From positions 149,544,001-149,608,000 of the forward strand of contig NC_059428.1 in assembly GCF_021028975.2 (NCBI RefSeq): a stretch of 64,000 nt of DNA, in the 5' to 3' direction. The position numbers were made by a program, and so were the translations under genes. Position 1 is the first letter of the stretch. Every line of letters begins with the position of its first letter. Under the pieces are notes generated by a model. The model ran no database searches. It was not told the DNA's origin and worked only from the letters and a program-made list of their open reading frames with translations. Shown here one piece after another: positions 13,594 through 46,200 of the stretch. The DNA comes from Sphaerodactylus townsendi (Eukaryota).

Positions 13594-16500
13594 ATGGCTG
13601 CCCCGGTGGAGGCGCGGAGCTCTTGCGACAAGGAGGAGGTGGGCCGTTCCCACGTGCAGTGGGGGGCGGGGTGCGAGTCAGAGCCGGCGGGCCGTAAGCT
13701 CTCCACCTCTCTCGGATGAGCCTCCCTTGCGGGGTTGTTGTGAGGCTCAAAGGGAGGAAGCCGGAGTAGCATGGGCCGGCCTGGGCTTCCAAATGTGACA
13801 GAAAGACCACGAGGGCTGTGCTTCTTCCAATGGGAGGCTCCCTGCTGTGACTTTACGAATTGCTATTGAGTCTCCTCCCTGCATCTAGAAAGTCAGCATG
13901 GGAGGGAGGGAGGGAGGTTGCTCTTGGCGCTGGCTGTCTAGTTGCACTGCGCCCCACCACAGTGGAAGCCTACACCTGCACCCTACCTTGGCCCTTGTTC
14001 CCTCGCACGTGTGAACCGCTCCTTTGGCGGGACAAAGCCATCTATCCATTTGTGTGCTTTGCCATCCAGTCCCAGCTGATTTCTGGTGATGCCGTAGTAG
14101 GGTTTTCAAGGCAAGAGGCATTCAGAGGTGGTGTTTGCTGTTGCCCGCCTCCATGTCATGCCCCAAAGGTTCCCACCCAAATCCTAGCCAGGGGCTGTGT
14201 GACTGACCCAAGGTCATCCAGCAAGCTTCCATGGCACAAGTGGGGAATTCAACCCGGGGTTTCCCAGATCCTACTCCAACACTTTTAACCACTACACCAC
14301 GCTGCCTCTCTAGTTATTTTTACCTCACTCGTTTTCCCCAAAGAGATGGGGTGGCCTCCGTGGCTCTGAGCAGCAACGCTGGGAAGTGTTTGGAGACAGG
14401 GGATCCCTTTCCCCACAGGAGCCTCCAATTCTACAGTGCACCTTTATATTAAAAAAACTTTATATTAAAAACTCCCCAGAAATTTAGCATGGAGGATTGT
14501 TTTCTGCTGGCTTGTGATTTTTGTAGTGCAGGGAGTATTTTTTTTCCTTTTCAAATGCAAAGGAACATGCAGAGGTGAAACCCACCGCCTGCAGTCTGAA
14601 ATGATATCCTCCGGGTTACCACCTCAGGATGTTTGCAGATATGAGCCACTGCAGGCCACTGAGATGGGATCTCTCTTGGGCTCAGCGTTTCCTGGCTTTC
14701 CACAGTTTTAATAACTTCTGCAGTGCAGAGGTGGGTGGATTCTGGGTGTTGTACTGTTTGATTCTTGTGAACATCAGAGCAGCCCAGCTGGCCTCTTCTC
14801 GCTCGTTGGTGTCCCAGCTAAAGGAATTTCAGTTGATGTCTGAGCATGGCTTGCCTGCTGCAGAAGTCTTCAGAGCAGAAGTTCCGACCCTAGCCTGGGG
14901 TCCCAATTCCTCTAGTAAGGCTAGATCAGTCGTTCTCAACCTTCCTAACGCCGCGACCCTTTAATACAGTTCCTCATGTTGTGGAACTGTACCTAACATT
15001 TATCCATTTTATAGATGGAGAACACTGATGCAGAGAGTCTTAGGCGACCCCTGTGAAAGGTCGTTCGACCCCCAAAGGGGTCCCGACCCACAGGTTGAGA
15101 ACCGCTGGGCTGGATGGTTTGTAATCTGGGGAGAAGACTTCCTGTCTAAGCCACTGTTTTAAATGGCAGCATTGCAGTGAATTGCAGGCATGATCCCTAA
15201 CAGCACCCTTGCAATGTCTGTGTCTTGCAGCTGAAGGAGAAGTTGGCCTCCCTGCAGAAAGAATACAGGAAGACTTTCGGCAGGCTGCAGGTGAATCAGC
15301 AGAGGCCGATCTGTCAAGCCTCTCCAGGTGGAGGAGAGGGAAGTTCTGTGCTTCACAAAACAAAACGGTGCCACAAATGTTCAAAACTGCGGGAAGGGCT
15401 AATCCTTTGCTTCGTTCTCTGCAGCGTGCTGCAAGGACCGAGAAGGTCAAGAGTCATGTCAAGGAAACGATTGCGAGGCAAAATTGCTGGCTTCTGCAGG
15501 CGGCGGCTGAGGAGGACCCTGCAGGTAACCAATAAGACGTGCCAGTCAGGAGGCCGTGAGTTTCCAGCCCTGCACGCCTTCAGACCTGGAAGGGAGGACG
15601 GGCCAGGGGACTTGGCTGATACTTAGTCCCTTCTGGGGAAGAGGGGTGGCTCTGTGCCTGTTCTGTCTCTGTGCAATACATGATATAGACCAGAGATGCG
15701 CCCTTCTGACTCCACATGGATGGAAGGAACCGTTCTGCTTTTCCCGCTCCTTTTGTTAAAAGGGTATCTGGGGGCCCTTCAAGACACCAAGTTTTTCCGT
15801 CCCATTTCTGTTCACTCGCTCCAGTTGCTCTTCTAGAAAGTTTCCCACTTGGTAAAAATGTGCCTCCCTTCCTCGTTGGGGAGGGAGGGAGGAAGCTACT
15901 CAGCACCTGCTTTTCATTTCACAGCATCCTCCTGCCAGGTGGCTCCCGAGGCCTCTGCCAGCCACCTGCCTGGTTCTTGTTCTGAGACGAACGCTCTGAG
16001 AACCCCATCGGTGACCTTCAATCTTGAGCCTGAGGTGTTCAGCCCGGGAGGCTCCTTGCCTGAGAACTGGGGCTCAGTGTGTCCTGACAGGACGCATGGA
16101 AGGATTCTCCGGGGCCTTGGGCTGCCTGCTCTGGAAAAAAAACCAAGCCGCCTGTCCAGAAGCAGAAGGAAGGGACCGCCAAGGGGGCCTTTGGAGGAGA
16201 GAAGAGAAGATACGCCTGAAGCAGGGAAGGAAGGGCCCAGCCTGGAGGGTCCTCAGTCACCGGTCTTCACGAGGCTCAGCAGCAGTTTCGAGATTGATCG
16301 CAGGATCCTGACAATGCCTTTGGCAGCTGCAGCAAGAGAAGGAAGCAGCCCGTCCCCCTCCCTGACACCACAGCCAGAAAGTCCACATGGGGAAAACATC
16401 ACGCCCAAAGTCCTCCATCCACTTCCTGGGATCCTCTTAGAAGAGAGTCGGGGTCTCTCCCCTGAGCCCCTCTGGACCGAAGGCATCTCTGCCACCCCTG

Positions 16501-19500
16501 AAGATTCAGCAGTCAAGGACATGCCATTTCTTGCCCACGTTCAGAAAGCCTCAAAGGAAAAAGAGAGAGGCAGGGAGGGGGAGGAAGAAGGCCGGTGCAG
16601 ATCCGCCTCCTCTGAGGGTGCAAGAGAACCGTGCCAAGAAAGAAGCCTTCCTGGGGAGCCGCAGAGCTCCAGCTGTCTTGCCACTGAGTCTCCCGTCTCC
16701 AAGCCAGGAGAGGCGGGTTCCAGAGGGGAGGCTGAGGCTGGGTCTCCCCCCCTGCAGGCGGTCTCTCCTTCCACCCCCACCCACAGCCTTCTGGACTCTT
16801 GCACAGTTGTGGAGGGGCTCCTGTTTCCAGTGGAATATTACGTGAGGACCACCCGGCGAATGTCCCGTTGCCAGCGGGAGCTGAACCTGGAAGCCGTCAT
16901 TCGGAGCCAGCTGGGCAAGAGGAGGAGGAGGGGCCGGAGGGTCTCCCTGAAGGACACGGTGCCAAGTCCCACTCCCTCCGCCCAAGAGCTGCCAGGAAGT
17001 GGGGCCCTTTCTGCCCCTCCCCAAGCAGGCCGGGAAAGGAGGAGCGGGTCTCCATTGGCACTGGAGAGCCCCAGGGCTGGCGAAGGGCTGCCTCAGAGCG
17101 GGACTGTCACGAGGCAGAGGCGGAAGGGGAGAGGGCGACCCCGGCACGGGACTCCAAGCCATGGGGCTCGAGAACCATTGGCATTGGGGGGTCTCGAAGG
17201 AAACGGCTGTCTTGGTTCGAGTGAGAGGTGTCAGCCGGAGCCTCAAGAGCAGGCTGGGAACTGGGACCATTCTGGGATGGAGCCAGCACCCAGGGGCAAG
17301 ATGTCTTCACCTCCAGGTGAGCCCTCAAGTAAAAGGTGAGGCGTGAAGAGCCCCCCCCCCCCCCGGTGTGTGATGCTTGAAGTCACTGAGACTGGAGTAC
17401 GGCAGTCCTGGGGTGGCATTCACAAATGCACCGGGAAGGGCCCAGGTTGCATGCATCCACCCACTGGGCAGCCAGAGACAAGTTTCTCTTCTATGTTTGC
17501 AGGTCGAAGAAGGAGCAGGCCATGCGTCGGAGTTTTGCTTGGCTGCCCTCTCCAGTGGCTGCCCTCAGACTTGGCCCTCCAAGAATTTCACTTGCCTGCA
17601 GAGGAGTTTGGCCTCCTTCAGTCAGAAAAGGTCAGGGCTTCTGCCAGGAAGCCCCCAGAGGCCGTGGGTTCTGGCGAGCCGCTCGAGCGTCTCCAGGGGG
17701 CCGATCCTGCCAACCTGCAGGCAGTGGAAGAGAGTCCAGGTGATGTTCTCTTTCCTCCGGAGGACGAGTCCTCTGAGCTGTGCCTCCCTCCGCAGGACTT
17801 GCACTCGAGCAAGCTGCTCCTCTCCCCAACAGATGTTGTCCTGGAGGGGGGCATCAGTCAGCTGGAAAGCCACCTGCCCACCCCTCTGTTCCCTCTGGTG
17901 GGGACAACCCCTGCCACTCAGGACTTTCGTGGCTCACCTGGGCAAGGGCAAGCCAACCCCTCTCAGGAGCCAAGTGCCAAAGCGGCGGGCACGCAGATCC
18001 GTGGCACAGGGGAAGAGCGATCCCGTGTGGCAATGTTGTGCCCCAAGGACGGAGAGGGAGCCAGCTGGAAGCCTGACGAACCAGGCGTGCAAGTGGAAGC
18101 AAGGCAGGAGCTGACAGCTAAGTCTGGAGAGCAGTGCGAGGCCTCTGTCAACCAGGTAAGAGGAGGAGAGCCTCCCTAGGAGGGCCCGCGAGTTGTCCTG
18201 GGAGAAGGTGCACATCGCTAGAGAACCCCACAACCAACATCTGTCTTGCCTGGGGAACTGACATCAGCGTTCACCCCCCCTTTCCGCCCTCAGTCTCTTT
18301 GCTCCGCCTCCAAAGCCCCTCCTGCCCCTCCTGCTCCAGGGGTCTGCGTGAGCTGCTGTCCCCCTTCCTCTTTTCCTTGGTGCCTCTTTCCTTTCGCTCT
18401 CTGTTGGGTCCTCTTCCCACAGCCTCTCTCCTGCTTTGTGTTCGTTCTGCTGGTCCCGGGCCCTCTCCATGCCTCTGACTGGTCCACTTTTTCCTGCCCG
18501 CGATCATCCTCGGGGCATTAAGACCTTGCAAAAGGTTCTGGTTTTTTAATCTGACCTTTCACTTTCACGCATGGATCCCGCGCTGTTTACCAGCATCCTG
18601 TGGCTGGACGTTTTCTCCTGAGTAGCTAGGACGTCTTTGACGTTCAGACTACCCTTTCTTCCCTGCGGGCAGGTTTATTCAGCTCACTCACAGGGCTGAG
18701 GGTAGCTGGGAATGGAGAGCGCTGCAGCTGCCTTCCTTGAGACCAGAGTGCCGGGGGGGGGGGGGGCTTTTCTCCTCACTGTCCCTTGATATGTTCCCTC
18801 AGCAGGAAAAAGCAGAAGACTTGGCAGCGGGGGGGCCGACACATCGCCGTGGAGAAGGGAATTGGAAGATGACCTCCAAGCTAAAGGTGGGCAGGAGAGA
18901 AGTGCAGGCAGTGGGGGTTTGTTGTCCAGCTTCTGGACTGTGCGGAGGACGCCTTGTGCAGACGCTCGCTTGCCTGTGTCACTTGTGGACAGACCTCCAG
19001 GCTTCCTTGGTACATCCAGCAGGCAAATTGCCACTTGCAGCTCCCAGGCAGACTGGAGCTCTGGGGCTTCTCCCCCGCCCCCCAAAAATAATGGCCAGGC
19101 GGTGGGAGCACCCAGCACCCCCACCCCCCCCGTCCCTGCCCAAACCCAGAGCCGTGCCTTGCTGCTAACGCTTCAGATTGACAGACCCTGCTTGGAGCCC
19201 ATAAATGCCTGTGCTGGAAGAATTCCCTTCCTTCTCCTGCTTTGTCCAGAATTCTGCAGGTTCCTGCACTGTGGATTTGAGCGCTGTGTGGTGGGAGATA
19301 GCGGACTTCACCGAATTGTGCGTTGTGACTGCTTGCGAGGCCTCCGTTGCCCTCTGGAGGCACCTGGACTCCGGCTGCTGGGAAACAGTCCACACCTGGA
19401 GCTTTGCAGAGGTAGAGGAGGGTGCCTTGCTGGGGCCCGTTGCTGGCTATGGCTTCCCTGGGCTCCTTCTTTGCAGACGGGCTCTGAGGACCGTCCCGAG

Positions 19501-31178: not shown

Positions 31179-31459
31179 AAGGGCAGGAAGACGAGTGTCT
31201 TGACAATGTGGTGCTGCAGTGAAACCTCCTCCCTTCTGCACAGCCCTGAAAAGACCACCGCCCCCCTCCCTCCATGGATCCAGGCCCTTAAAGCTCCAAG
31301 CATGTTCCAAGCCCGGGTGTGCAATATCATGCTTAGATATTTGGAAAACTCTCTCTCTAGGGGTCTGCGCCCTGTAGCTCTCCAGATGTTCATGGACTAC
31401 AATTCCCATCATCCCCTGCCAGCATGGAGCGCCACAGGTTGCAGAAGTTCTAGGCTAGA

Positions 31460-36278: not shown

Positions 36279-36543
36279 ACTACTGTGTGGCAAAAATTGG
36301 GCACGATGCTGTCACTTGCTGGAAAATAATTCCCACCCATCCCTCTTGCCTCCACTCCCCAGAGTCGGCCTGATGACTGTGCAGTGTTCAAAGGGGATCC
36401 ATTGAGACCAGCGGGGTTTGGGGCTCTGAATCAAATGATAAATGGTGTTGGCTACTCTGAGATGTGTCCAGAGCGCCGTCCCAGGACCTAACCGCGGCCC
36501 TTTTTGTCTCAGGGAATTAGTGCAAGAGGAGGAGAAACGGTTG

Positions 36544-37205
36544 ATGGAAGAAAGGAAAAAGAGGAAAGAGGAGAAGAAGAAAAGAGAAGCTGCTCCGAAG
36601 AAGGTGAGCCTTTTGTTTCTCTGAGAGGGGTACGCAGCCCAGGCGGCTGGCAGCAAATCCCAGTCATCAGAACCGATGCAGTCTCAAAGCTGTTGAGCCT
36701 CCGTTGTGTTCTCTTTCCTGTTGTTCTGATGCTCCACACAGACACGGCTCATGTTATCTGGTCCAGTTGCTGCTGGGGTTGTGTTTCTGCTTTTGCCTGG
36801 CTGACCATTTCTAACAGAAAAATCTTGCATTTAAACATTTGTGCTGAGTCTGACATACTGTTGTTTGGGAAGGAGGATCTTTTGCCGTTTAATATGCATC
36901 TTTGAATGATCTTGTTATGATATTTAAGTTCAGCACTTTTGTTTATGTTCGTAATTCTGTCCGTTTATAGGGCAAGAATGTACCCAGAAGTCATTAATTG
37001 GTTGATTGACTTTTTGTTTCAGGCCACTGAACAGAAAAACAAAGGTAGGCCACCTCCGAGGTCTTGACGTAAGTTTGCTGTGGTGCGGTGAAGGACTCTG
37101 AAAGTGGAGGAGAAGTGCCAGCTCGCTTCTCAGTGCTGAATCCTTTCTCCAGGCTTTAGCCAAGGCCGTGGCAGAAAGGCAGAGAGGGGGTGGTGAAGGT
37201 GGCAT

Positions 37206-37246
<41 letters not shown>

Positions 37247-40200
37247 CACACGTTTGCATCACCTGACTGGTTAGGGGAGTGGCTAAGAAGTAGAGCAAGC
37301 CAGACCTGAGGAATGAAAAGCCTTGCAATTCTTGACAGAGGGAGTGTGCTGAAGAGAGACCTCCTCCCCCTCCCCCCGTGGCCTGCCTGCTCCCTCTTGT
37401 GCTCGTGGTCCCTTTCCTGAGTGACTCTGAGCTCCAAGTCTCTCTTTCCTCCTGGCCCCGTGAGCCTTCAGACAGAGTTGAATATTGATGCGCCTTTGAG
37501 CCTGGAAGTCCTTTACTGAGAGGTGGGCAGCATCTCAGTCAGTACTGGCTCTCCTCTGCCAAGCCTGCCGTGGCCCTGGAGCCCTCCTGTGGGCTGTGGT
37601 GGGTGAGCTGGAGCAGCGCTGGTTTCCGAGGGCAAGGGCCTTTGCACGCTCAGTCGAGGAGCCGTGACTTGAGAGCAGCCATCGTTTGGAAGCTGGCCAA
37701 ATAATCATGGCCTTTGGACTGGGGGTGGGGGGTGATGGGGAACTCTCAGGCTCACGCCCCACCTGCCAGGATTGGCTCGGAGTGCTCTGCAGAGCAGGAC
37801 GGGACGTGAAGAGGGAGAAAGCTTCCTCCTCTGTGCCCCCAGCATCCGACAGTCAGCACTTGGCAGTTCTCTGCATCTGTCTATGCTTAGTTCTTGTGGC
37901 TTGACCCATCCCAGTTTTGACAGTCTTGTGAGCCATCCTGCTACGGTGAATAGACTCCCCACCCCCACCCCCCGGCTGTAACCCCTCCATAGTTCTCCCT
38001 TCTGTCTCCAAAGCAACCTGGTCTGTTCATGAGCAACTGAGCAGTGAGGAATGTTCACAAAAATTCTAACCCCGCAGGTTTATCTTTTAAGATGCTTGGA
38101 TTTTATTTTTGTAACCGAAACACCCACTTTTATCAGCAGGGAGGTTTCTGTGGGTATTGACCTACGCTTGTAAGCCACCTTAAACTCTGTATGGAAGAAA
38201 GGCTGCTCTTAAAGGTTTTGAGTAAGTAAATAAATAGTTCTGTCTTTTCCTCCCTCCAGTGCCAGAACCACCAAAGCCAGGTGCAAGCCCATCTCAGCCT
38301 GCTGTCTCCATTCCTACCGGTACTTCCACGGCAGCCAGCGGCAGCAGTAATAACACCAACAATAATGCCAGACGGCCTGCAGGCAGCCACCCGCAGCCAG
38401 CCCCGCAGCAGCCTTCTCCTCGCTACCCACCCCGTGAGGTGCCGCCCCGATTTCGGCACCAGGAGCAGAAGCAGCTTTTGAAGCGTGGGCAGCAGCTGCC
38501 GGGGCTTGCAGTGAACCTGGGGGCCGCACCGAAGCCGGCAGACGGCCTGTCAGGAGGCAGCCCGGCCACAAGCACGCAGCCGGCCGTGGCTGGCGGAGAC
38601 GAGCAGAGCAGCAGCCAAAAACAAGGAGGTGAGAGAGAAAGGGGCGAGGGGGGGCAGCTTTTCCTCCTGTGAAGGCCCACTGGGGGCACTGGGGGGGGGT
38701 GCTTGGGCAAAAGCCCCACCAGGTGTGGACCCACTTTCTTAAAACATTTGGTGGGCATCCGGAATAGTGTTGGGTGGTACCACGGAGCCCACGGGCACCA
38801 CTTTTGGAAACTCCCACTCTCACGTAAGGAGGGCTGCTGCTTCCATAACCCAGGGGTCTGCAACCTGCGGCTCTCCAGATGTTCATGGACTACAATTCCC
38901 ATCAGCCCCTGCCAGCATGGCCAATTGGATGGGAATTGTAGTCCATGAACATCTGGAGAGTCGCAGGTTGCAGACCCGGTCAATAACCTGTCTTTACAAG
39001 AAGCTGAAGGCAGCGAACCTTGGAGACGTGTTCTGCAGGAGCCCCGTTTTATTTGTTTGCAGTATTTCTGCCGCGCCTCCCCAGAACCCTGCCTGAGGCA
39101 GCTTATGACAATAGAAAACAATACAATACAAAATGTTAAAAGGTGTTAATTGAAATCCCGCATTAAAGAAGCGCGGCCTGAAATCATAAAAGCAGCGTGA
39201 AACGGCAGCTTCCAGGCTAAGGGGGTTTACTTTTTGAAACACAAAGCAGGGGAGGCCTGATCAGGCCAGGCTTTTCCGGCAGCCCCTTCCTGGTGGGGTG
39301 GCTGTTTCAGGTGTCTCCAGCGGGGCCTGGGTCTGAGACTGGGGTTTCCAGGTCCTGGGCCAGCGGACGCAGACCTCCTGGCTGCCCATCAGAACTCAGG
39401 GGACCCAGCCTCACGGGAGGCGCCACAGAGCCTGGGCTGGCTTTCTGGCTAGCATGGAAGGGTGGGCTAGAGATGCGCCTGCTGGCTGGCGGGGAAGGGG
39501 TGGGGATCTGTTAGCGGGCTTCAGGCTCCAGGAGACCGTGCGACCCGCCTGCAGGTGATCCGTGGCTGTGGAGCAGTTGGGCAGAGTTAGTCGAGCATCA
39601 CGTCTCTGGCCCAACAGGATGCAAGTGGCGCTTGCGTTTGTTACTTGGCTGTTCTGCCGAAAGCACAGCTAGTTCGCTCCTCCTCGTAGGCACAGCAGGG
39701 CTGCAGACACCAGCATTCCTTAGACTGGCCGCCTCTATGCTGCCAGGTGAGGCTGGTGGTCCTCCAGAGTCGCCCATGTGTGCACGCTGTGAGTGGCAGC
39801 GGGGCCGTTCTGCTCGGGGAGAGTCTGGCGTGATATGCAGCAAGGAAGGCTGCTCCCAGCGGTTCCTTGTGTTTCAGCTCCGTACAGATTGGAACGCAGG
39901 TTGTGTCTTGGTTGGACCGCGTCTGCTTCGGGTCTGAAGGCAGGCGTGGCGGCTGGGGAGGTGTGCGGGGAAGGTGGCGAGACCCCAGTAACCTCCTCTG
40001 ATCTCTTGCTTTTCCCGTAGGCATGCCTCCCATTCGGGACTTGGTCAGCCACTCCCCTAACCAGTCAGGTGATGCAAACGCATTTCCCTTTCATGTGTGT
40101 CTCCATGGCTTGGCAGTTCTGTCTGCTCCTTTCACCTTCTTTCTGGGTCACCTGGTCTGTAGGTTGGGAATTTGCTGCCGTCACACCCGGCTTGCCTTTC

Positions 40201-43200
40201 TCCAGGGGTCAAGGGGCAGCCCTTGGCAACTGCTGCTGTGTTTTGGCTTTTCCTGCATCGCTTCCATCACTAACCGTTGGCTCGAATCCAAATTGCTGCT
40301 GAACCAACTGGAAACTGTCTTCTGTCCTGCAGCACAAAACTGCTTTTGAACCCCCCCCCCCCCCCCCGAATTTTGAAAGCGGCTTTCTGGATGGCTGCAT
40401 TCGCCTGTCAGGAGCAAACCTCAGCTGGTTCATGAAAGGTGGCGATCTAGTGGATTGCCGGCCTCAGGGGCTTTCCTTGTGCTTAGTGCCGCCTGGGAGT
40501 GGGCACCTGACGATGGGTAGTTTCTTTCTTCCGCACTGGGGTTCTGAACCTGGGCCCTGTCCTCAAGGGGAGGAAGGGGCTGCAGTTGAGCAGAGGTGTA
40601 CCCTCCGCCAGCTCAGATGGCTTCCTTGTGCCACATAAACCCAAGGAACCAAGCTAGAGAAAAAAGCGAGGCAAAACTAGAGGCATTTCAAAGAGGAGAG
40701 GCACATGCCACACCGTGGGCTGCTTCTTCTCCTGAAGGATGGAGGCCCAAGTTGGCTTCAGAGTATGGGTAGCTGTCAGGGTGGGATGCCACGAGGAAGT
40801 CCACGGGCTCCTCTTGCTTGGTGCCTTGACGGTTGCTGCCTGTGTCTGCTGCCGCGTCAGTCCTCCTCTGGCTCAGAACCAGCCTGGGGGTCTCAGCCAC
40901 TGCTTTTTAGCGTGAGCAAGCTTCTGGCCCCTCCCTGCCAGGATCAGAGACACTGCCCGCATAGCCCCAAGGCCTGGGTGCAAGTCACGCGTTTGCCGCT
41001 TACTGCAAGCAGCAGGCTTTTGCAGACCTGGCTGGGTGTTTTGTTTGTTGAAGAGAAAAAGCAACTGCTTTGGGGTGTCCCCTGTTCCATCTGAATCTCT
41101 TGCAGGTTCCTGGTTTTCCACGTGTGGCACAGGAATTGCTGAGCACCCTCCCCTTAAGGGCTACCTTGACACAGAGTCTGTGGGCCCCTGTTTGGTGCAC
41201 CTTTGTTGAGAATGCGAGGAAATGTGCAGGGGGCGCATGCACAAAACAGTGCGGCCCTCGTCCTCCAGTCTGTGGCTCTTGCTTTGCGTTTGCTTGCCAC
41301 CCTGTGTCCATTGCCGTTCTCCTTGCGTGCCTGTTTGAGTGACGCCGTGTCTCCCTGTTTCCCCCCTAGATCTGAACCACAGCACACGAGGACCCCACTA
41401 TGAGAGTGCTCACTGGGGAGCTGTCTCTTCCAGTAGCGACTCCAGCACAAATTGGGAGAAAGTCCTCCTAGACGGCTCAGACAAGGAGGCATGGCCCTTC
41501 AGCGCCAACGGCAGTGACACGGAGCTGGCTTCAGAATGTATGGACACTGACTCTTCCTCGAGCTCCGGGTCAGAGAAGAGCCTGGCGCTCATGGCTTCCA
41601 GAGGCCCAGGCGCGGATGGCGGCGTGCTGAACGGCATTGGGCACAGCTCTCCGGCCACGTTCGTTGGCGGTAGCCACAGCAATAACGGGAGTGGAGGCGG
41701 CTTGAGCCGGCCGTGGGGCATGTGTCTCAGCGCCGGGATGAGCACAGGTCAGGCCTCAGCAGATGCTTCCAAGGGCATATCTGAAGGTGGCCGTGGCAGG
41801 GGGAACTCTTGGGGCATGCTCAACCCATCGCCCAGCGGAGGGCTGAATCCCAGCACTTTGAATGCCAGCAGCAGCTGCGGTGCCTGGCCCACGTTGGAGA
41901 GCAACTGGCACCCCCTGAAAGGGCCTGGTGGAGGTGGCGGTGGCGGAAGTCAGGGAGGGAGCAATCCAAGCAGGACCCCTGGCCCCTGGGGGAGCCTCTC
42001 GGAGAGCAGCCGTGATGACCAAGCCAATGGTGCCAGGAAGGTTTCGCAGAGCAGGCAACCTCAGAACCTTAACCCTGAAACAAATGGACCAAATAGTAAC
42101 ACTACTAACGTGATGACCTCTAGTTTACCAAACTCCGCCGGCTCTGTGCAGGCGAACGAGCCAGCCGGCAGCGACGCAGGGGCCGGGGCCTGGGGCCGGG
42201 GCGGCAGGACCTCTCTCCCTCTGCTCCAGACCTCACCGGCACTCAGCGGCCCGTCCGTTCCTCATGTGAGCAACGGTGAAGTGAAAATCAGCAGCACGGC
42301 TTGGGCGGGCACCTGCGAGCCCACCTACTCCGGAGACCGAAGGTCTGACTCCAACAGCGGAGCCAGCAGCAACACTGTGAATGCAACTCTAATGCAGCCG
42401 GGGCTCAGCAGGGCTAGCAGCACAAACTTTGAAACCAACGGGGATAAAGGAGCAGGGGAGTGGGAGGGAGCCGGGACAGCCTGCCCCCCAAACTTGCCAT
42501 GGGGGGGCAGCTCAGGCTCCGGGGGCAGCCGGGGAGGCTGGAGCAGGCTGCCCCAAAGCAACAACTTTGCAGACGGAGAGTGGAACCAGATGCTGAGCAA
42601 TCGGTGCCCTTCCGAGAACGGCAGCGGGAGCGTCAGTTTCACGAGCATGTGGCAATCCACCGAGGAGGAGAGCGCGAGCACGGAAGGGCAGAGTTCCGCG
42701 CCCTCTCCCTTCCCAGAGCAGCACGGCAGGGGAGCGAAATGGGCCAGCCCGGGGGGGAGCGAAATGGGCCCCGACAGCCCCCAGGAAAGAGCAGCGGTGG
42801 ACGAAGGGGCCGGTCACGAGAGAGGGAAAGCTGACCCGTACGCGCTGCTCCAAAGCATCCTGAACAGGACAGGCTTGGACCCGCGAGTCCTTTCCAACTC
42901 CGGCTGGGGCCAGACGCCCATCAAGCAGAACACCTCCTGGGACATGGCGGCTTCCCCCCGAGCAGAGAGGAAGGCAGACAACGGCACCGAGGCTTGGGGA
43001 GGCCGCAGCTCAGGGGGAGGTGTGGAGAGGCCTGGCGGGAACTATGGCTCTTCGGGGTCAGGGTGGAGCGAGCCAAAGTCTGCTCTGAGGTGGGGAGACG
43101 CCAAGGTCTCCAGCAGCCAGGGGGGCTGGGAGCAACCCGCCCCTTCCGCACAGGCCAAAGGCAATCAGTCGTGGGCGGCGGGTGGCAAAGACAACAAGTC

Positions 43201-46200
43201 CTCGCTTTCCCTGTGGAACGATGGGGAGAAGTTAAAACCGGGGCCGGGAGACAGGCAGAAGGCGAGCCCCGTGTGGACAGGCCCAGCTGTCGACGGCTGG
43301 GGGGAGAACTGGAGAAGTAGCAACCACTGGGGCGAGGCGAAGAAGTCCAGTTCCGGCAGCTTGGCGGCAAGCGTGGGTCGGGGCAGCTGGAAGGAACCGA
43401 AGCAAAGGCTGGCGCTGGCCGCTGGGGAGGGCAGAAGACCCAGCTCAGGCCCCTCATCAGGTGGGAGGAGCCCCCCAAGCCGAGCCAAAGCCAGGGCTGG
43501 GGGGAGCCTCCGAACCCAGTTTCTCCTCGGAACCTCACTTGACTAGGAGGCAAGGCAGCAAGATGTCCGGGGAGCTGGGAGCCGAGAGTAGGAGGTAGTT
43601 CCCAGGTGGAGGCGATGCAGACGCAGCCAAGGAAGAGGAACCCACCGGGTGGGAGGAGCCTTCCCCCGAATCAATTCGCCGTAAAATGGAGGTCGACGAC
43701 GGGACCTCCGCTTGGGGGGACCCGAGCGGGTACAACTACAAGAACGTGAATTTGTGGGACAAGAACACCCCAAGAGTGGGCGACCCTTCGGACCAGCAAG
43801 CACACGGCCCTCCGCAGCACCTGCCAGCCCATGCAGCACCCGGCCCAGAAAATGGTGGTGGCAGCAGCAGCTCCAGTAAGCTCTCCTTTGGGGTATAGCC
43901 TGCCTGCCTCTCCTGTAATATCCTGGGAGTAGGAGTTGGGGGCCCCTCTCACACCCTTCCCAGTCGCCCCAAGCTCTGTGACTGCAGCAGCCCAGCAGCC
44001 TCATGCATAAGAAGTTGCCAGAGTGGGAGGCTGGCCAGAGCTAGCCCCAATCTGGAACGAGGTTGGCCCACTGGGCAGACCTCGGCTGTTTTTGGGCACT
44101 TCCGGTCTGTGCTTGATTTTAAATCGCCTGAAGGGGAATTGAGGCTGCCGTTCACACTGGACATGTCCGGTGCCCAGCGCAGGTGCCACACTGGTGGTCA
44201 TGGAACAAACCAACCCCCTCCTGGGCCCTTTTTGCCAAGGGACTCGGGTGCCTGCTCCCACGGCTGGCGGGGGAAGAGTGCCTGGCTGGCTGGGTGGCTG
44301 GCTGGAAACTAGACCTTCACACTAGTCCTTTTTTGCTACGATTGAGCCGGCAAAATGGGCTCCGGTCTTGGGCCTTCCTGCTAACCTCTGTCTCTTTTGA
44401 AAGGTTGGGGAGAGCCCCCTCCCCCACCAACCACTGTAGACAATGGCACATCGGCGTGGGGCAAGCCTGTCGACACGGGGGCCAGCTGGGGGGACTCCAT
44501 CGGCGATGCAGGTGGCACCGCGAACTGGGGGAGCTTGCCCGCTAGTCAGCCGGCTCCGAATAAAGCTGGTAGGTGTTGGGGGGAGGGAAGGAGGAGGGGC
44601 TCTGGGGCTTGACTGGAGCTGGCTGCTCTCCCCTCCGGGCTGGGCGGTTTTGCCAGCTGAGAAGCAGCCCGCCTGGCAGGTGACCCGGGCACCGTCCGCA
44701 GCCAGGGGCACAGTTCTGCGTTGAAGAGTGGCTGTGTGTGTTCCACCTTGGGAAGACCCCAGAGTCTGCCTGGCCGAGCTGGCCCGGCTGGTGTAGGGGG
44801 GAGCAAGCATGCCCTTGGCAGCGGGTATCCTGCCAAGAAAGCGGCTGGGAAGGGCTCGGAGGATGTGGACATTGGAATGTGGAACAGCAGCTCAGCCCAA
44901 GACGGCGGCCCCGCTCTGGATTGGTCGTCTTATGCAAAGAGGCTGCCCCCCAAGGTGCGTTCCAACTTCAGTCAAACAGGAGGGGGGGGGGGGGGGCTAG
45001 CCAATGTCTGTCTAAGCCCCTTTCCATGTCCTTTAATAGTACTGGGTGTTCCCAAGCAGGCAGGCAGGAGTGGATGGGTGGGTGGGCTCGGGGGTCCCCT
45101 GGGCCCTGCTTCCTGTCCGTAGTTGTGCTTCGTGGCCTGACAGTGGAAGGCAGGGATTCTTTTTCGTTCATGCCAATTTTCTCTCTGCTTTTCAACCCAC
45201 ATAATCCTGCCACGTGGGAGGGGGCGGGCCAAGGCCAGCCTAATGGAGTGCTTTTTTCAAAGAATCCAAGCTGCATTTTAATTTTGATTCTGTACATTTT
45301 AAAAGGAGCCACGATTAAATCCGACATGCACTTGATGCATTCAGCAGGCCTTGCCGTTCCATATTGCTCCACAGAAACTTTAATACAGTGCTTTCTTGGT
45401 TTAGGGAACAGTGAAAAATGGAAATAAGCAAGATGAAACATGGATCCCAAATAAACCCACATGTAAAGCAAGCTGGCCCATCTCAGCTACTCCAAAAGTA
45501 AAACTGGCTAGCAGTCCTTGCAAGCCCCGAGTAGCTTGAGACCACCCCTTGCCTGCCCCTCTTGTTTCTCCCCATATTTCCAAAAGTACCCATGAGCATT
45601 ACAGAAGTCAGCACTTACAAGTCCCCCACCCTGCAGGCATCAACCCAGGGTGGAGGCAGAGAGAAAGCGATAGGGGCGGGGTCTGTGGGTCTGCTCTTGG
45701 CTCGTGTTGGGTTTCTTCTATACAGAAGTCGCTACCCACATCTTACAGAGAGGTGGTGCAGGAGGAGACCACGCACAGCAATAAGATGGACCTGCCTGGA
45801 GGTGAGTGTGGGTGCAGGAAAGGCAGCAGAGGCCCCGGAGTTCCCCTGCAGGTCCTTTCAAATCCCAAATCCCACTTGCCCAAGTGGCTAAAGATGAGCC
45901 TTGTTGTCTGGTAGCTACGCTGAGCTCCACTGAGCAGGTTTTTGCCTGAAGCCACCCACTTACGGTTAAAACATGCTGTCCATCAGCAAGGAGTAGTGAG
46001 TTTAAAACATTCTAATCACAGAACTAGGGGTTTGGGTTCCCCACTCCTCCACCTGAGTGGCAGAGGCTTCAGTGGCCTGCGCTGTAGGCCAGAGGACTTG
46101 GGGGGGGGGGAGGGGGGGCTGCAGTGCAAACCCTCCTCTGGGAGGAGGACAGCTGGAGCTGGTGGGGCAGCCCCTTCTGCAGACAGGAAGGTCCAGGTGG

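What the first reader, a model, noticed from the sequence alone, without database searches (positions are those of the whole stretch)
37251..40080. Perfect 34-nt long-range duplex in TNRC6A pre-mRNA that buries a micro-exon's 5' splice site and loops out exon 5: candidate RNA-structure splicing switch
Seen: 37251-37284 (intron 4) is the exact reverse complement of 40047-40080, which is the last 22 nt of the 48-nt exon 40021-40068 plus the first 12 nt of its intron, including the GTGATG donor. The arms are 2.76 kb apart, match none of the repeats recognised in this window, and the upstream arm abuts a (CA)n tract (an hnRNP L-type motif). An A:C mismatch (A37285:C40046) and a few further pairs extend the helix. 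Both enclosed exons (369 nt and 48 nt) are phase 1-1 and multiples of 3, so skipping either keeps the frame. Inference: pairing would block U1 access to the micro-exon donor and/or loop out exon 5, and could be an ADAR substrate, controlling N-terminal isoforms of the core miRNA-silencing scaffold. I do not know a description of this element.
Basis: partly seen in the sequence, partly recalled or inferred. Interest (0 to 1): 0.85.

Follow-up and report, generated by a model that had tools for sequence, protein, structure and literature searches.

The report
Young inverted copy of TNRC6A micro-exon donor
A 34-base inverted copy of the end of an ancient TNRC6A micro-exon and its splice donor lies in an upstream intron in a few closely related lizard-like species; it most likely arose as a DNA copying accident, and whether the strong RNA helix it could form changes splicing is untested.

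Summary
Bases 37251-37284 are the exact reverse complement of 40047-40080, there are only two copies in the window, and none is expected by chance.

The 48-nt exon (40021-40068) is real and ancient. Its peptide is spliced into annotated TNRC6A of a sawshark and a paddlefish. The exon is 47/48 nt identical in a songbird genome and 45/48 in Phrynosoma.

The intronic arm is the derived copy:
- It ends sharply at 34 nt and abuts a (CA)22 microsatellite.
- It is absent from Phrynosoma and the bird, which both keep the exon.

It is not an assembly artefact. Contigs from public runs of three organisms (about 0, 1 and 4% diverged) break at exactly the positions a 34-nt exact repeat predicts.

Staying perfect across that shallow clade has a probability of about 0.1-0.15 under neutrality, so selection is not shown.

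Best reading: a single templated (template-switch type) inverted micro-duplication. It created a -70.8 kcal/mol long-range helix over a weak donor and probably lowers micro-exon inclusion. Squamates have lost this exon at least three times.

No RNA run was available, so the splicing, editing and circular-RNA effects are all untested.

The parts
36513..36603 (+). TNRC6A coding exon ([30 protein letters not shown])
   Evidence: Splice sites and frame read directly. 80-86% identical to Gekko and bird loci.
37023..37044 (+). 22-nt constitutive exon (ATEQKNK+G), the exon just upstream of the intron that holds the left arm
   Evidence: Flanked by AG and GT. Conserved with its flanks in Gekko, Phrynosoma and Anolis. 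It restores the frame between the 36513-36603 exon and exon 5.
37207..37251 (.). (CA)22.5 microsatellite abutting the left arm
   Evidence: TRF. In runs X1, X4 and X7 the upstream contigs run 25-34 nt beyond 37198, where the tool's repeat mask begins.
37251..37284 (+). Left (intronic, derived) arm: inverted copy of the micro-exon 3' end plus donor
   Evidence: 34/34 complementary. Sharp edges. Contigs of X1, X4 and X7 start at 37255, as predicted for a 34-nt repeat with k=31. Absent from Phrynosoma, bird and Gekko.
38260..38628 (+). TNRC6A exon 5 (369 nt), enclosed by the two arms
   Evidence: ORF and splice sites. Homologues are named TNRC6A.
38854..38977 (.). High-copy interspersed repeat forming its own 50-nt-arm hairpin, inside the loop
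   Evidence: the repeat finder I1. Summed depth there reaches 1.3-9.8 million in the four runs. Other copies lie at about 31377 and 20369.
40021..40068 (+). Ancient 48-nt alternative exon ([16 protein letters not shown])
   Evidence: Peptide spliced into sawshark P0027 and paddlefish XP_041085556.1. 47/48 nt identical in Melospiza (L003) and 45/48 in Phrynosoma (L006).
40047..40080 (+). Right (ancestral, source) arm: last 22 exon nt plus first 12 intron nt including the donor
   Evidence: Contigs end at 40076 and start at 40051 in X1, X4 and X7. The intron start GTGATGCAAAC is shared with Phrynosoma.
41370..43546 (+). Large TNRC6A exon 6 (start of the GW-rich region)
   Evidence: Acceptor read directly. 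ORF. 76-82% identical to Gekko, Phrynosoma, Anolis and bird.

Best explanation
The intronic arm is a lineage-specific templated inverted micro-duplication.

**Origin.** In one event (template switching during replication or break repair at the (CA)n microsatellite), 34 nt were copied in reverse-complement orientation. The template was the 3' end and donor of a roughly 450-million-year-old alternative exon of TNRC6A, 2.76 kb downstream. The copy became fixed before the common ancestor of at least three closely related species.

**Consequence (inferred).** In transcripts where the upstream intron is still present when the micro-exon is transcribed, the two arms form a perfect 34-bp helix. The helix hides the already weak donor (CAG|GTGATG) from U1, so the exon is skipped more often. 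It may also favour skipping or circularisation of exon 5. The change is probably tolerated rather than adaptive, because other squamates have lost this exon outright.

**Shown:** the repeat, its polarity, its presence in three organisms, and its absence in more distant carriers of the exon.

**Inferred:** the mutational mechanism and every RNA-level effect.
For: - The repeat is exact, has two copies and is not due to chance.
- It has sharp 34-nt edges and abuts (CA)22.5.
- Polarity: the exon arm is ancestral. The evidence is the shark and paddlefish peptide, 47/48 nt identity in the bird, and the Phrynosoma exon plus shared intron start.
- No left-arm copy exists in Phrynosoma or the bird. The bird has no outlier duplex: -47.9 against a control of -45.9 +/- 9.3.
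- It is real DNA in three organisms. Contig ends fall at 37255, 40076 and 40051 in X1, X4 and X7.
- Helix strength: -70.8 kcal/mol, 34/34 pairs in the MFE of 5.2 kb, ddG 44.8.
- The exon is dispensable in squamates. It is absent from intron 5 of Gekko kuhli, Anolis sagrei and contig L004, and from 9 Anolis RefSeq isoforms.
- Known processes make such copies: PMC5453318, PMC8794818, PMC11724301 and PMC8421209.
Against: - The 2.76-kb distance between template and copy is longer than the short-range template switches usually described.
- Junction microhomology is at most 1 nt.
- Both arms stayed perfect in three lineages (P about 0.1-0.15 under neutrality). This leans slightly towards constraint.
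- The exon itself is fully intact and under strong constraint in this species, which fits poorly with a donor-masking helix being harmless.
- No RNA data exist for any effect.
Confidence: 0.6

Rival explanations
1. A selected RNA switch. The helix is maintained by selection to regulate inclusion of the micro-exon, for example opened by a helicase or an RNA-binding protein such as hnRNP L on the adjacent CA tract. Alternatively it serves as an editing-site complementary sequence for ADAR on the exon's five recodable adenosines (40047, 40051, 40059, 40060, 40063).
For: - Perfect 34-bp complementarity with identical boundaries in three organisms up to about 4.3% diverged.
- The helix sits exactly on the donor of an exon whose synonymous sites are almost frozen between bird and lizard.
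- Very stable in silico.
- Long-range structures do regulate splicing (PMC10573301, PMC2724269, PMC3783185).
Against: - Absent in Phrynosoma and the bird, which keep the exon.
- No covariation is observable.
- The neutral probability of survival is about 0.1-0.15, so it is not significant.
- Sharp edges next to a microsatellite are a mutational signature.
- No RNA evidence.
Confidence: 0.2
2. The main consequence is back-splicing. The inverted pair flanks exon 5 and promotes a 369-nt circular RNA, or linear skipping of exon 5, whenever the micro-exon is treated as intron.
For: - The arms lie 975 nt upstream and 1.4 kb downstream of exon 5.
- Inverted repeats of about 30-40 nt are sufficient for circularisation in expression plasmids (PMC4201285).
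Against: - No RNA data.
- A high-copy repeat hairpin and other intronic sequence in the loop can compete.
- The right arm is partly exonic.
Confidence: 0.1
3. Assembly artefact or misjoin that created a spurious inverted copy.
For: Perfect identity, and position next to a microsatellite where assemblies often err.
Against: Independent public runs of three organisms from two studies break their k=31 contigs at exactly 37255, 40076 and 40051. This requires the same 34-nt repeat in their reads.
Confidence: 0.02

Closest known systems
Template-switch mutations and templated inverted insertions (four-point model, MMBIR/FoSTeS, foldback insertions at breaks; PMC5453318, PMC8794818, PMC11724301, PMC8421209)
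   Same: A single event creates a perfect reverse-complement copy of nearby sequence with abrupt ends. Such events are known to create RNA hairpins de novo. Copy length is within the reported range (about 5-34 bp in PMC11724301).
   Different: The template is 2.76 kb away rather than tens to hundreds of bases. The copy landed at a microsatellite. Microhomology at the junctions is minimal.
Long-range RNA structures that control splicing (Drosophila long-range structures PMC2724269; human RIC-seq-supported structures PMC10573301; SMN2 ISTL1 PMC3783185)
   Same: Complementary segments kilobases apart in one pre-mRNA, one of them overlapping a splice site of an alternative exon.
   Different: Those cases rest on conservation or covariation, or on mutagenesis. 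Here the partner arm is young and clade-restricted, no covariation is seen, and nothing has been tested in RNA.
Intronic inverted repeats that drive exon circularisation (PMC4201285)
   Same: An inverted pair of about the minimal sufficient length (30-40 nt) flanks an internal exon.
   Different: The downstream arm overlaps an alternative exon and its donor. No back-splice evidence.
ADAR editing-site complementary sequences (e.g. GluA2 Q/R; from general knowledge, not tested here)
   Same: An exon-intron duplex containing exonic adenosines at recoding positions.
   Different: The partner lies upstream and 2.8 kb away. The helix is perfect, without the bulges typical of site-selective substrates. 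No A-to-G evidence.

Membership tests
TNRC6A gene | Exons homologous to, and collinear with, annotated TNRC6A | tested here: met
   The exon-5 ORF hits proteins named TNRC6A. The 22-nt exon, exon 5 and exon 6 are collinear with Phrynosoma and Anolis TNRC6A loci, which carry Ago_hook and TNRC6-PABC_bdg.
Conserved alternative micro-exon | Same peptide and splice sites in distant vertebrates, and inclusion in annotated transcripts | tested here: met
   The identical 15-aa peptide lies between the exon 5 and exon 6 sequence in paddlefish, and follows the exon 5 sequence in the sawshark fragment. 47/48 nt with AG/GT in the bird. Usage in this species was not testable.
Template-switch / templated inverted insertion | Exact reverse-complement copy of a nearby ancestral sequence with abrupt boundaries | tested here: met
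   Polarity from outgroups.
Template-switch / templated inverted insertion | Short template distance (same fork) and junction microhomology | tested here: inconclusive
   The distance is 2762 nt. Only the C at 37251 is shared between the CA tract and the template.
Functional long-range RNA structure in splicing | Stable complementary segments in one pre-mRNA overlapping a splice signal | tested here: met
   -70.8 kcal/mol, all 34 pairs in the MFE, and the donor at 40069 lies inside the helix.
Functional long-range RNA structure in splicing | Evolutionary conservation or compensatory substitutions of both arms | tested here: not met
   The arm is present only in organisms A, B and D (4.3% divergence or less). 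It is absent in Phrynosoma and the bird. No covariation is visible.
Functional long-range RNA structure in splicing | Change in exon inclusion when the pairing is disrupted or restored | not testable with these tools
   No RNA run holds the stretch. Needs a minigene or ASO.
circRNA-promoting flanking repeats | Back-splice junction reads | not testable with these tools
   No RNA run.
ADAR substrate / ECS | A-to-G differences between RNA and DNA of the same individual within the duplex | not testable with these tools
   No RNA run. The runs laid are genomic-like contigs.

The most novel reading that the evidence does not exclude
One template-switch event created, in a single step, a working RNA switch on a roughly 450-million-year-old, nucleotide-frozen alternative exon of the core miRNA-silencing scaffold TNRC6A. 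The switch would act by masking the donor and/or by recruiting ADAR. It has since been kept perfect by selection in one small lizard clade. That would make it a natural gain-of-structure experiment, with sister species lacking the arm as controls.
Probability: 0.18. Interest if true: 0.65.

Novelty: new member of a known kind. Interest (0 to 1): 0.42.

Why it matters
If the helix lowers inclusion of the micro-exon, it would be a clean natural example of how one replication or repair accident can rewire splicing of a deeply conserved exon. Here the gene sets the N-terminal isoforms of the GW182/TNRC6A silencing scaffold.

It also offers a matched comparison for measuring what a single perfect 34-bp long-range helix does in vivo: species with the arm, species without it, and species that lost the exon.

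If it has no effect, it is an ordinary neutral footprint of templated insertion. It is also a caution that perfect long-range complementarity at a splice site need not mean regulation.

Tried and rejected
- **Chance match:** rejected.
- **Member of an interspersed repeat family:** rejected, because there are only two copies and one is an ancient exon.
- **Decayed larger inverted duplication:** rejected. Strict gapped local alignment of about 800-nt flanks returns only the 34 nt.
- **Assembly artefact:** rejected.
- **Ancient conserved partner arm:**
  - A 17-nt 15/17 match in the bird, upstream of exon 5 (L003 5138-5154), and a 16-nt match in Gekko (L001 14709-14724) are at chance level (E 0.14-0.5).
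  - The bird's best duplex is no outlier.
- **RNA evidence:** no run on record as RNA holds the stretch. The four runs laid are genomic-like contigs (uniform depth of about 20-30 over the introns in X1, X4 and X7; X5 lower and patchy), so no junctions, editing or circles could be read.
- **Run X5 (organism C):** too sparse over both arms to say anything.
- **Closer relatives through the protein collection:** the best exon-5 match is only 61% identical, so organisms A-E are not in that collection. No intermediate-distance species could be examined.
- **Earlier notes of this scan:** nothing relevant.
- **Papers on a TNRC6A micro-exon:** nothing specific to this exon.
  - No contig taken for human was fetched. 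The mammalian protein hits were not followed to DNA.

Full report
**1. The observation**

- Bases 37251-37284 and 40047-40080 are perfect reverse complements over 34 nt.
- With up to three mismatches allowed, the 34-mer occurs only at these two places in the 64-kb window. Shuffles expect 0.00 matches.
- A scan for all exact repeats of 20 nt or more shows that every other pair of 30 nt or more belongs to multi-copy interspersed repeats. This is the only two-copy pair, and one of its copies lies in coding sequence.
- The helix does not extend. After the A:C mismatch there is one A:T pair and then mismatches, and the outer side runs into the CA tract.
- A strictly scored gapped local alignment of about 800-nt flanks returns exactly the 34 nt.
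- TRF places (CA)22.5 at 37207-37251, touching the arm.

**2. Gene anatomy**

The gene is TNRC6A. The exon-5 ORF finds proteins that their sources name TNRC6A. The exons are collinear with the Phrynosoma and Anolis TNRC6A loci.

The local exons are:

| Exon | Coordinates | Length |
|---|---|---|
| Upstream coding exon | 36513-36603 | 91 nt |
| Small constitutive exon (ATEQKNK) | 37023-37044 | 22 nt |
| Exon 5 | 38260-38628 | 369 nt |
| Micro-exon | 40021-40068 | 48 nt |
| Exon 6 | from 41370 | large |

- The left arm lies 206 nt behind the donor of the 22-nt exon and 975 nt before exon 5.
- The right arm is the last 22 nt of the micro-exon plus 12 intron nt, so the donor CAG|GTGATG is inside the helix.
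- I checked the frame piecewise.

**3. The micro-exon is real and very old**

- Its peptide ([16 protein letters not shown]) stands directly after the exon-5 sequence in the sawshark TNRC6A-like fragment P0027, which ends two residues later.
- In paddlefish isoform X8 (XP_041085556.1) it stands between the exon-5 and exon-6 sequence.
- In the song sparrow genome (L003) the exon is 47/48 nt identical, with AG and GT in place. The one change is synonymous.
- In Phrynosoma (L006) it is 45/48 identical, and the first 11 intron bases are the same as here.
- The right arm is therefore the ancestral sequence and the intronic arm is the copy.

The exon is absent from intron 5 in three other squamate sequences:
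- Gekko kuhli (L001);
- Anolis sagrei (L007), where none of nine RefSeq isoforms has it;
- the squamate-like Logan contig L004.

So squamates have lost this exon repeatedly.

**4. How widely the intronic arm occurs**

No run on record as RNA holds the stretch. I laid four runs on 36400-41600.
- X1, X4 and X7 cover exons and introns evenly at about 20-30x, so they are genomic-like.
- Counting the differences in table 8, X1 (organism A) differs from the window by about 0.04%.
- X4 (organism B) differs by about 1.0%, and X7 (organism D) by about 4.3%.

The contigs are built from 31-letter words. A 34-nt exact repeat gives four shared words, so it should end the neighbouring contigs at three positions:
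- 40047+29 = 40076;
- 40080-29 = 40051;
- 37284-29 = 37255.

In all three runs the contigs end at 40076, begin at 40051 and begin at 37255. At 37255 the records carry two letters beyond the tool's repeat mask, which ends at 37256.

The same 34-nt inverted repeat, with the same boundaries, is therefore present in three organisms from two studies. It is neither an assembly artefact nor private to one species. X5 (organism C) is too sparse over both arms to tell.

In the opposite direction, more distant species lack the arm:
- Phrynosoma and the bird keep the exon but have no second copy anywhere in the locus.
- The bird's best long-range duplex for its donor region (-47.9 kcal/mol) is ordinary against controls (-45.9 +/- 9.3).
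- The introns of Gekko and Phrynosoma cannot be aligned at the insertion site.

The copy arose after the split from the Phrynosoma lineage and before the ancestor of organisms A, B and D.

**5. Is it under selection?**

- The tree length for A, B and D is about 0.048 substitutions per site.
- With 40-46 presumably neutral sites (34 in the copy, 6-12 in the intron part of the source), about two changes are expected.
- The chance of none is about 0.11-0.15.
- That is a hint of constraint, not evidence.
- The truncated difference table lists no difference within either arm in X4 or X7. The shared contig breaks show that the two arms still match each other in each run. Whether X7's arms are identical to the window's, or carry compensatory changes, cannot be seen.

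**6. What it would do in RNA (inferred)**

- The helix is worth -70.8 kcal/mol.
- In the minimum-energy fold of the whole 5.2-kb segment, all 34 pairs form. Forbidding the left arm from pairing costs 44.8 kcal/mol.
- The donor lacks the consensus +5 and +6 bases, so it is weak and should be sensitive to occlusion.
- The helix can form only while the upstream intron is still unspliced when the micro-exon emerges, about 2.8 kb later. Any effect would therefore be partial.

The expected outcomes, in order of likelihood, are:
1. More skipping of the micro-exon.
2. Looping-out or back-splicing of exon 5. Repeats of 30-40 nt suffice for circularisation in plasmids (PMC4201285).
3. ADAR editing of the five recodable exonic adenosines at 40047, 40051, 40059, 40060 and 40063.

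None of these could be tested.

**7. How it arose (inferred)**

An exact, sharply bounded reverse-complement copy of nearby sequence, deposited at a microsatellite, is the signature of template switching or templated insertion during replication or break repair (PMC5453318, PMC8794818, PMC11724301, PMC8421209).

Two features are unusual for the short-range versions of these processes: the 2.76-kb template distance and the near absence of junction microhomology. They fit better with fork-stalling or MMBIR-type switching. That last point rests on general knowledge and was not tested.

**8. Verdict**

- The micro-exon is a genuine ancient alternative exon.
- The intronic arm is a young copy, shared within a small clade and of mutational origin.
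- The idea of a splicing switch is plausible but unsupported by conservation and untested in RNA.
- I file it as a new instance of known kinds: a template-switch-born inverted repeat, and a long-range structure at a splice site.

Noticed in passing
window 37023-37044: A 22-nt constitutive TNRC6A exon (ATEQKNK) with strongly conserved flanking intron sequence: 86-89% identity to Gekko, Phrynosoma and Anolis over about 36-93 nt.
   Followed up: partly
L001 15366-18150; L007 about 16451-19163; L004 600-3510: The ancient 48-nt micro-exon is missing from intron 5 in Gekko kuhli, Anolis sagrei and one further squamate-like contig. It is kept in Phrynosoma (with a Q-to-P change) and in this window. 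This suggests repeated loss within squamates.
   Followed up: partly
window 38854-38977 (other copies near 31377 and 20369): A very high-copy interspersed repeat forming a 50-nt-arm, 98% hairpin in intron 5. Summed contig depth there reaches 1.3-9.8 million in the four runs.
   Followed up: no
window 39984-40103 versus L003 and L006: The micro-exon's synonymous sites are almost frozen (47/48 nt bird versus lizard), and the upstream polypyrimidine region is also conserved. This implies constraint beyond the peptide.
   Followed up: partly
window 40093-40101: A short (TG)4 run 13 nt behind the right arm can pair with the (CA)n tract next to the left arm. It extends the predicted duplex across an internal loop (-87.4 kcal/mol). 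This may be coincidence, or a trace of how the template was found.
   Followed up: no
window 1-31000: Upstream of TNRC6A, ORF fragments resemble ERN2, PALB2, DCTN5 (minus strand) and NDUFAB1. TNRC6A itself spans only about 22 kb (31.5-53.2 kb). These gene names are from recall of motifs and were not tested.
   Followed up: no
(Anolis sagrei records): NCBI lists both TNRC6A and 'TNRC6A-like' protein sets in Anolis sagrei, on two different large records (110.5 Mb and 84.7 Mb). These may be two loci or two assemblies/haplotypes.
   Followed up: no
window 40342-40365: A poly-C run. The listed X1 contigs leave a gap at 40352-40515, whereas X4 and X7 contigs span it.
   Followed up: no
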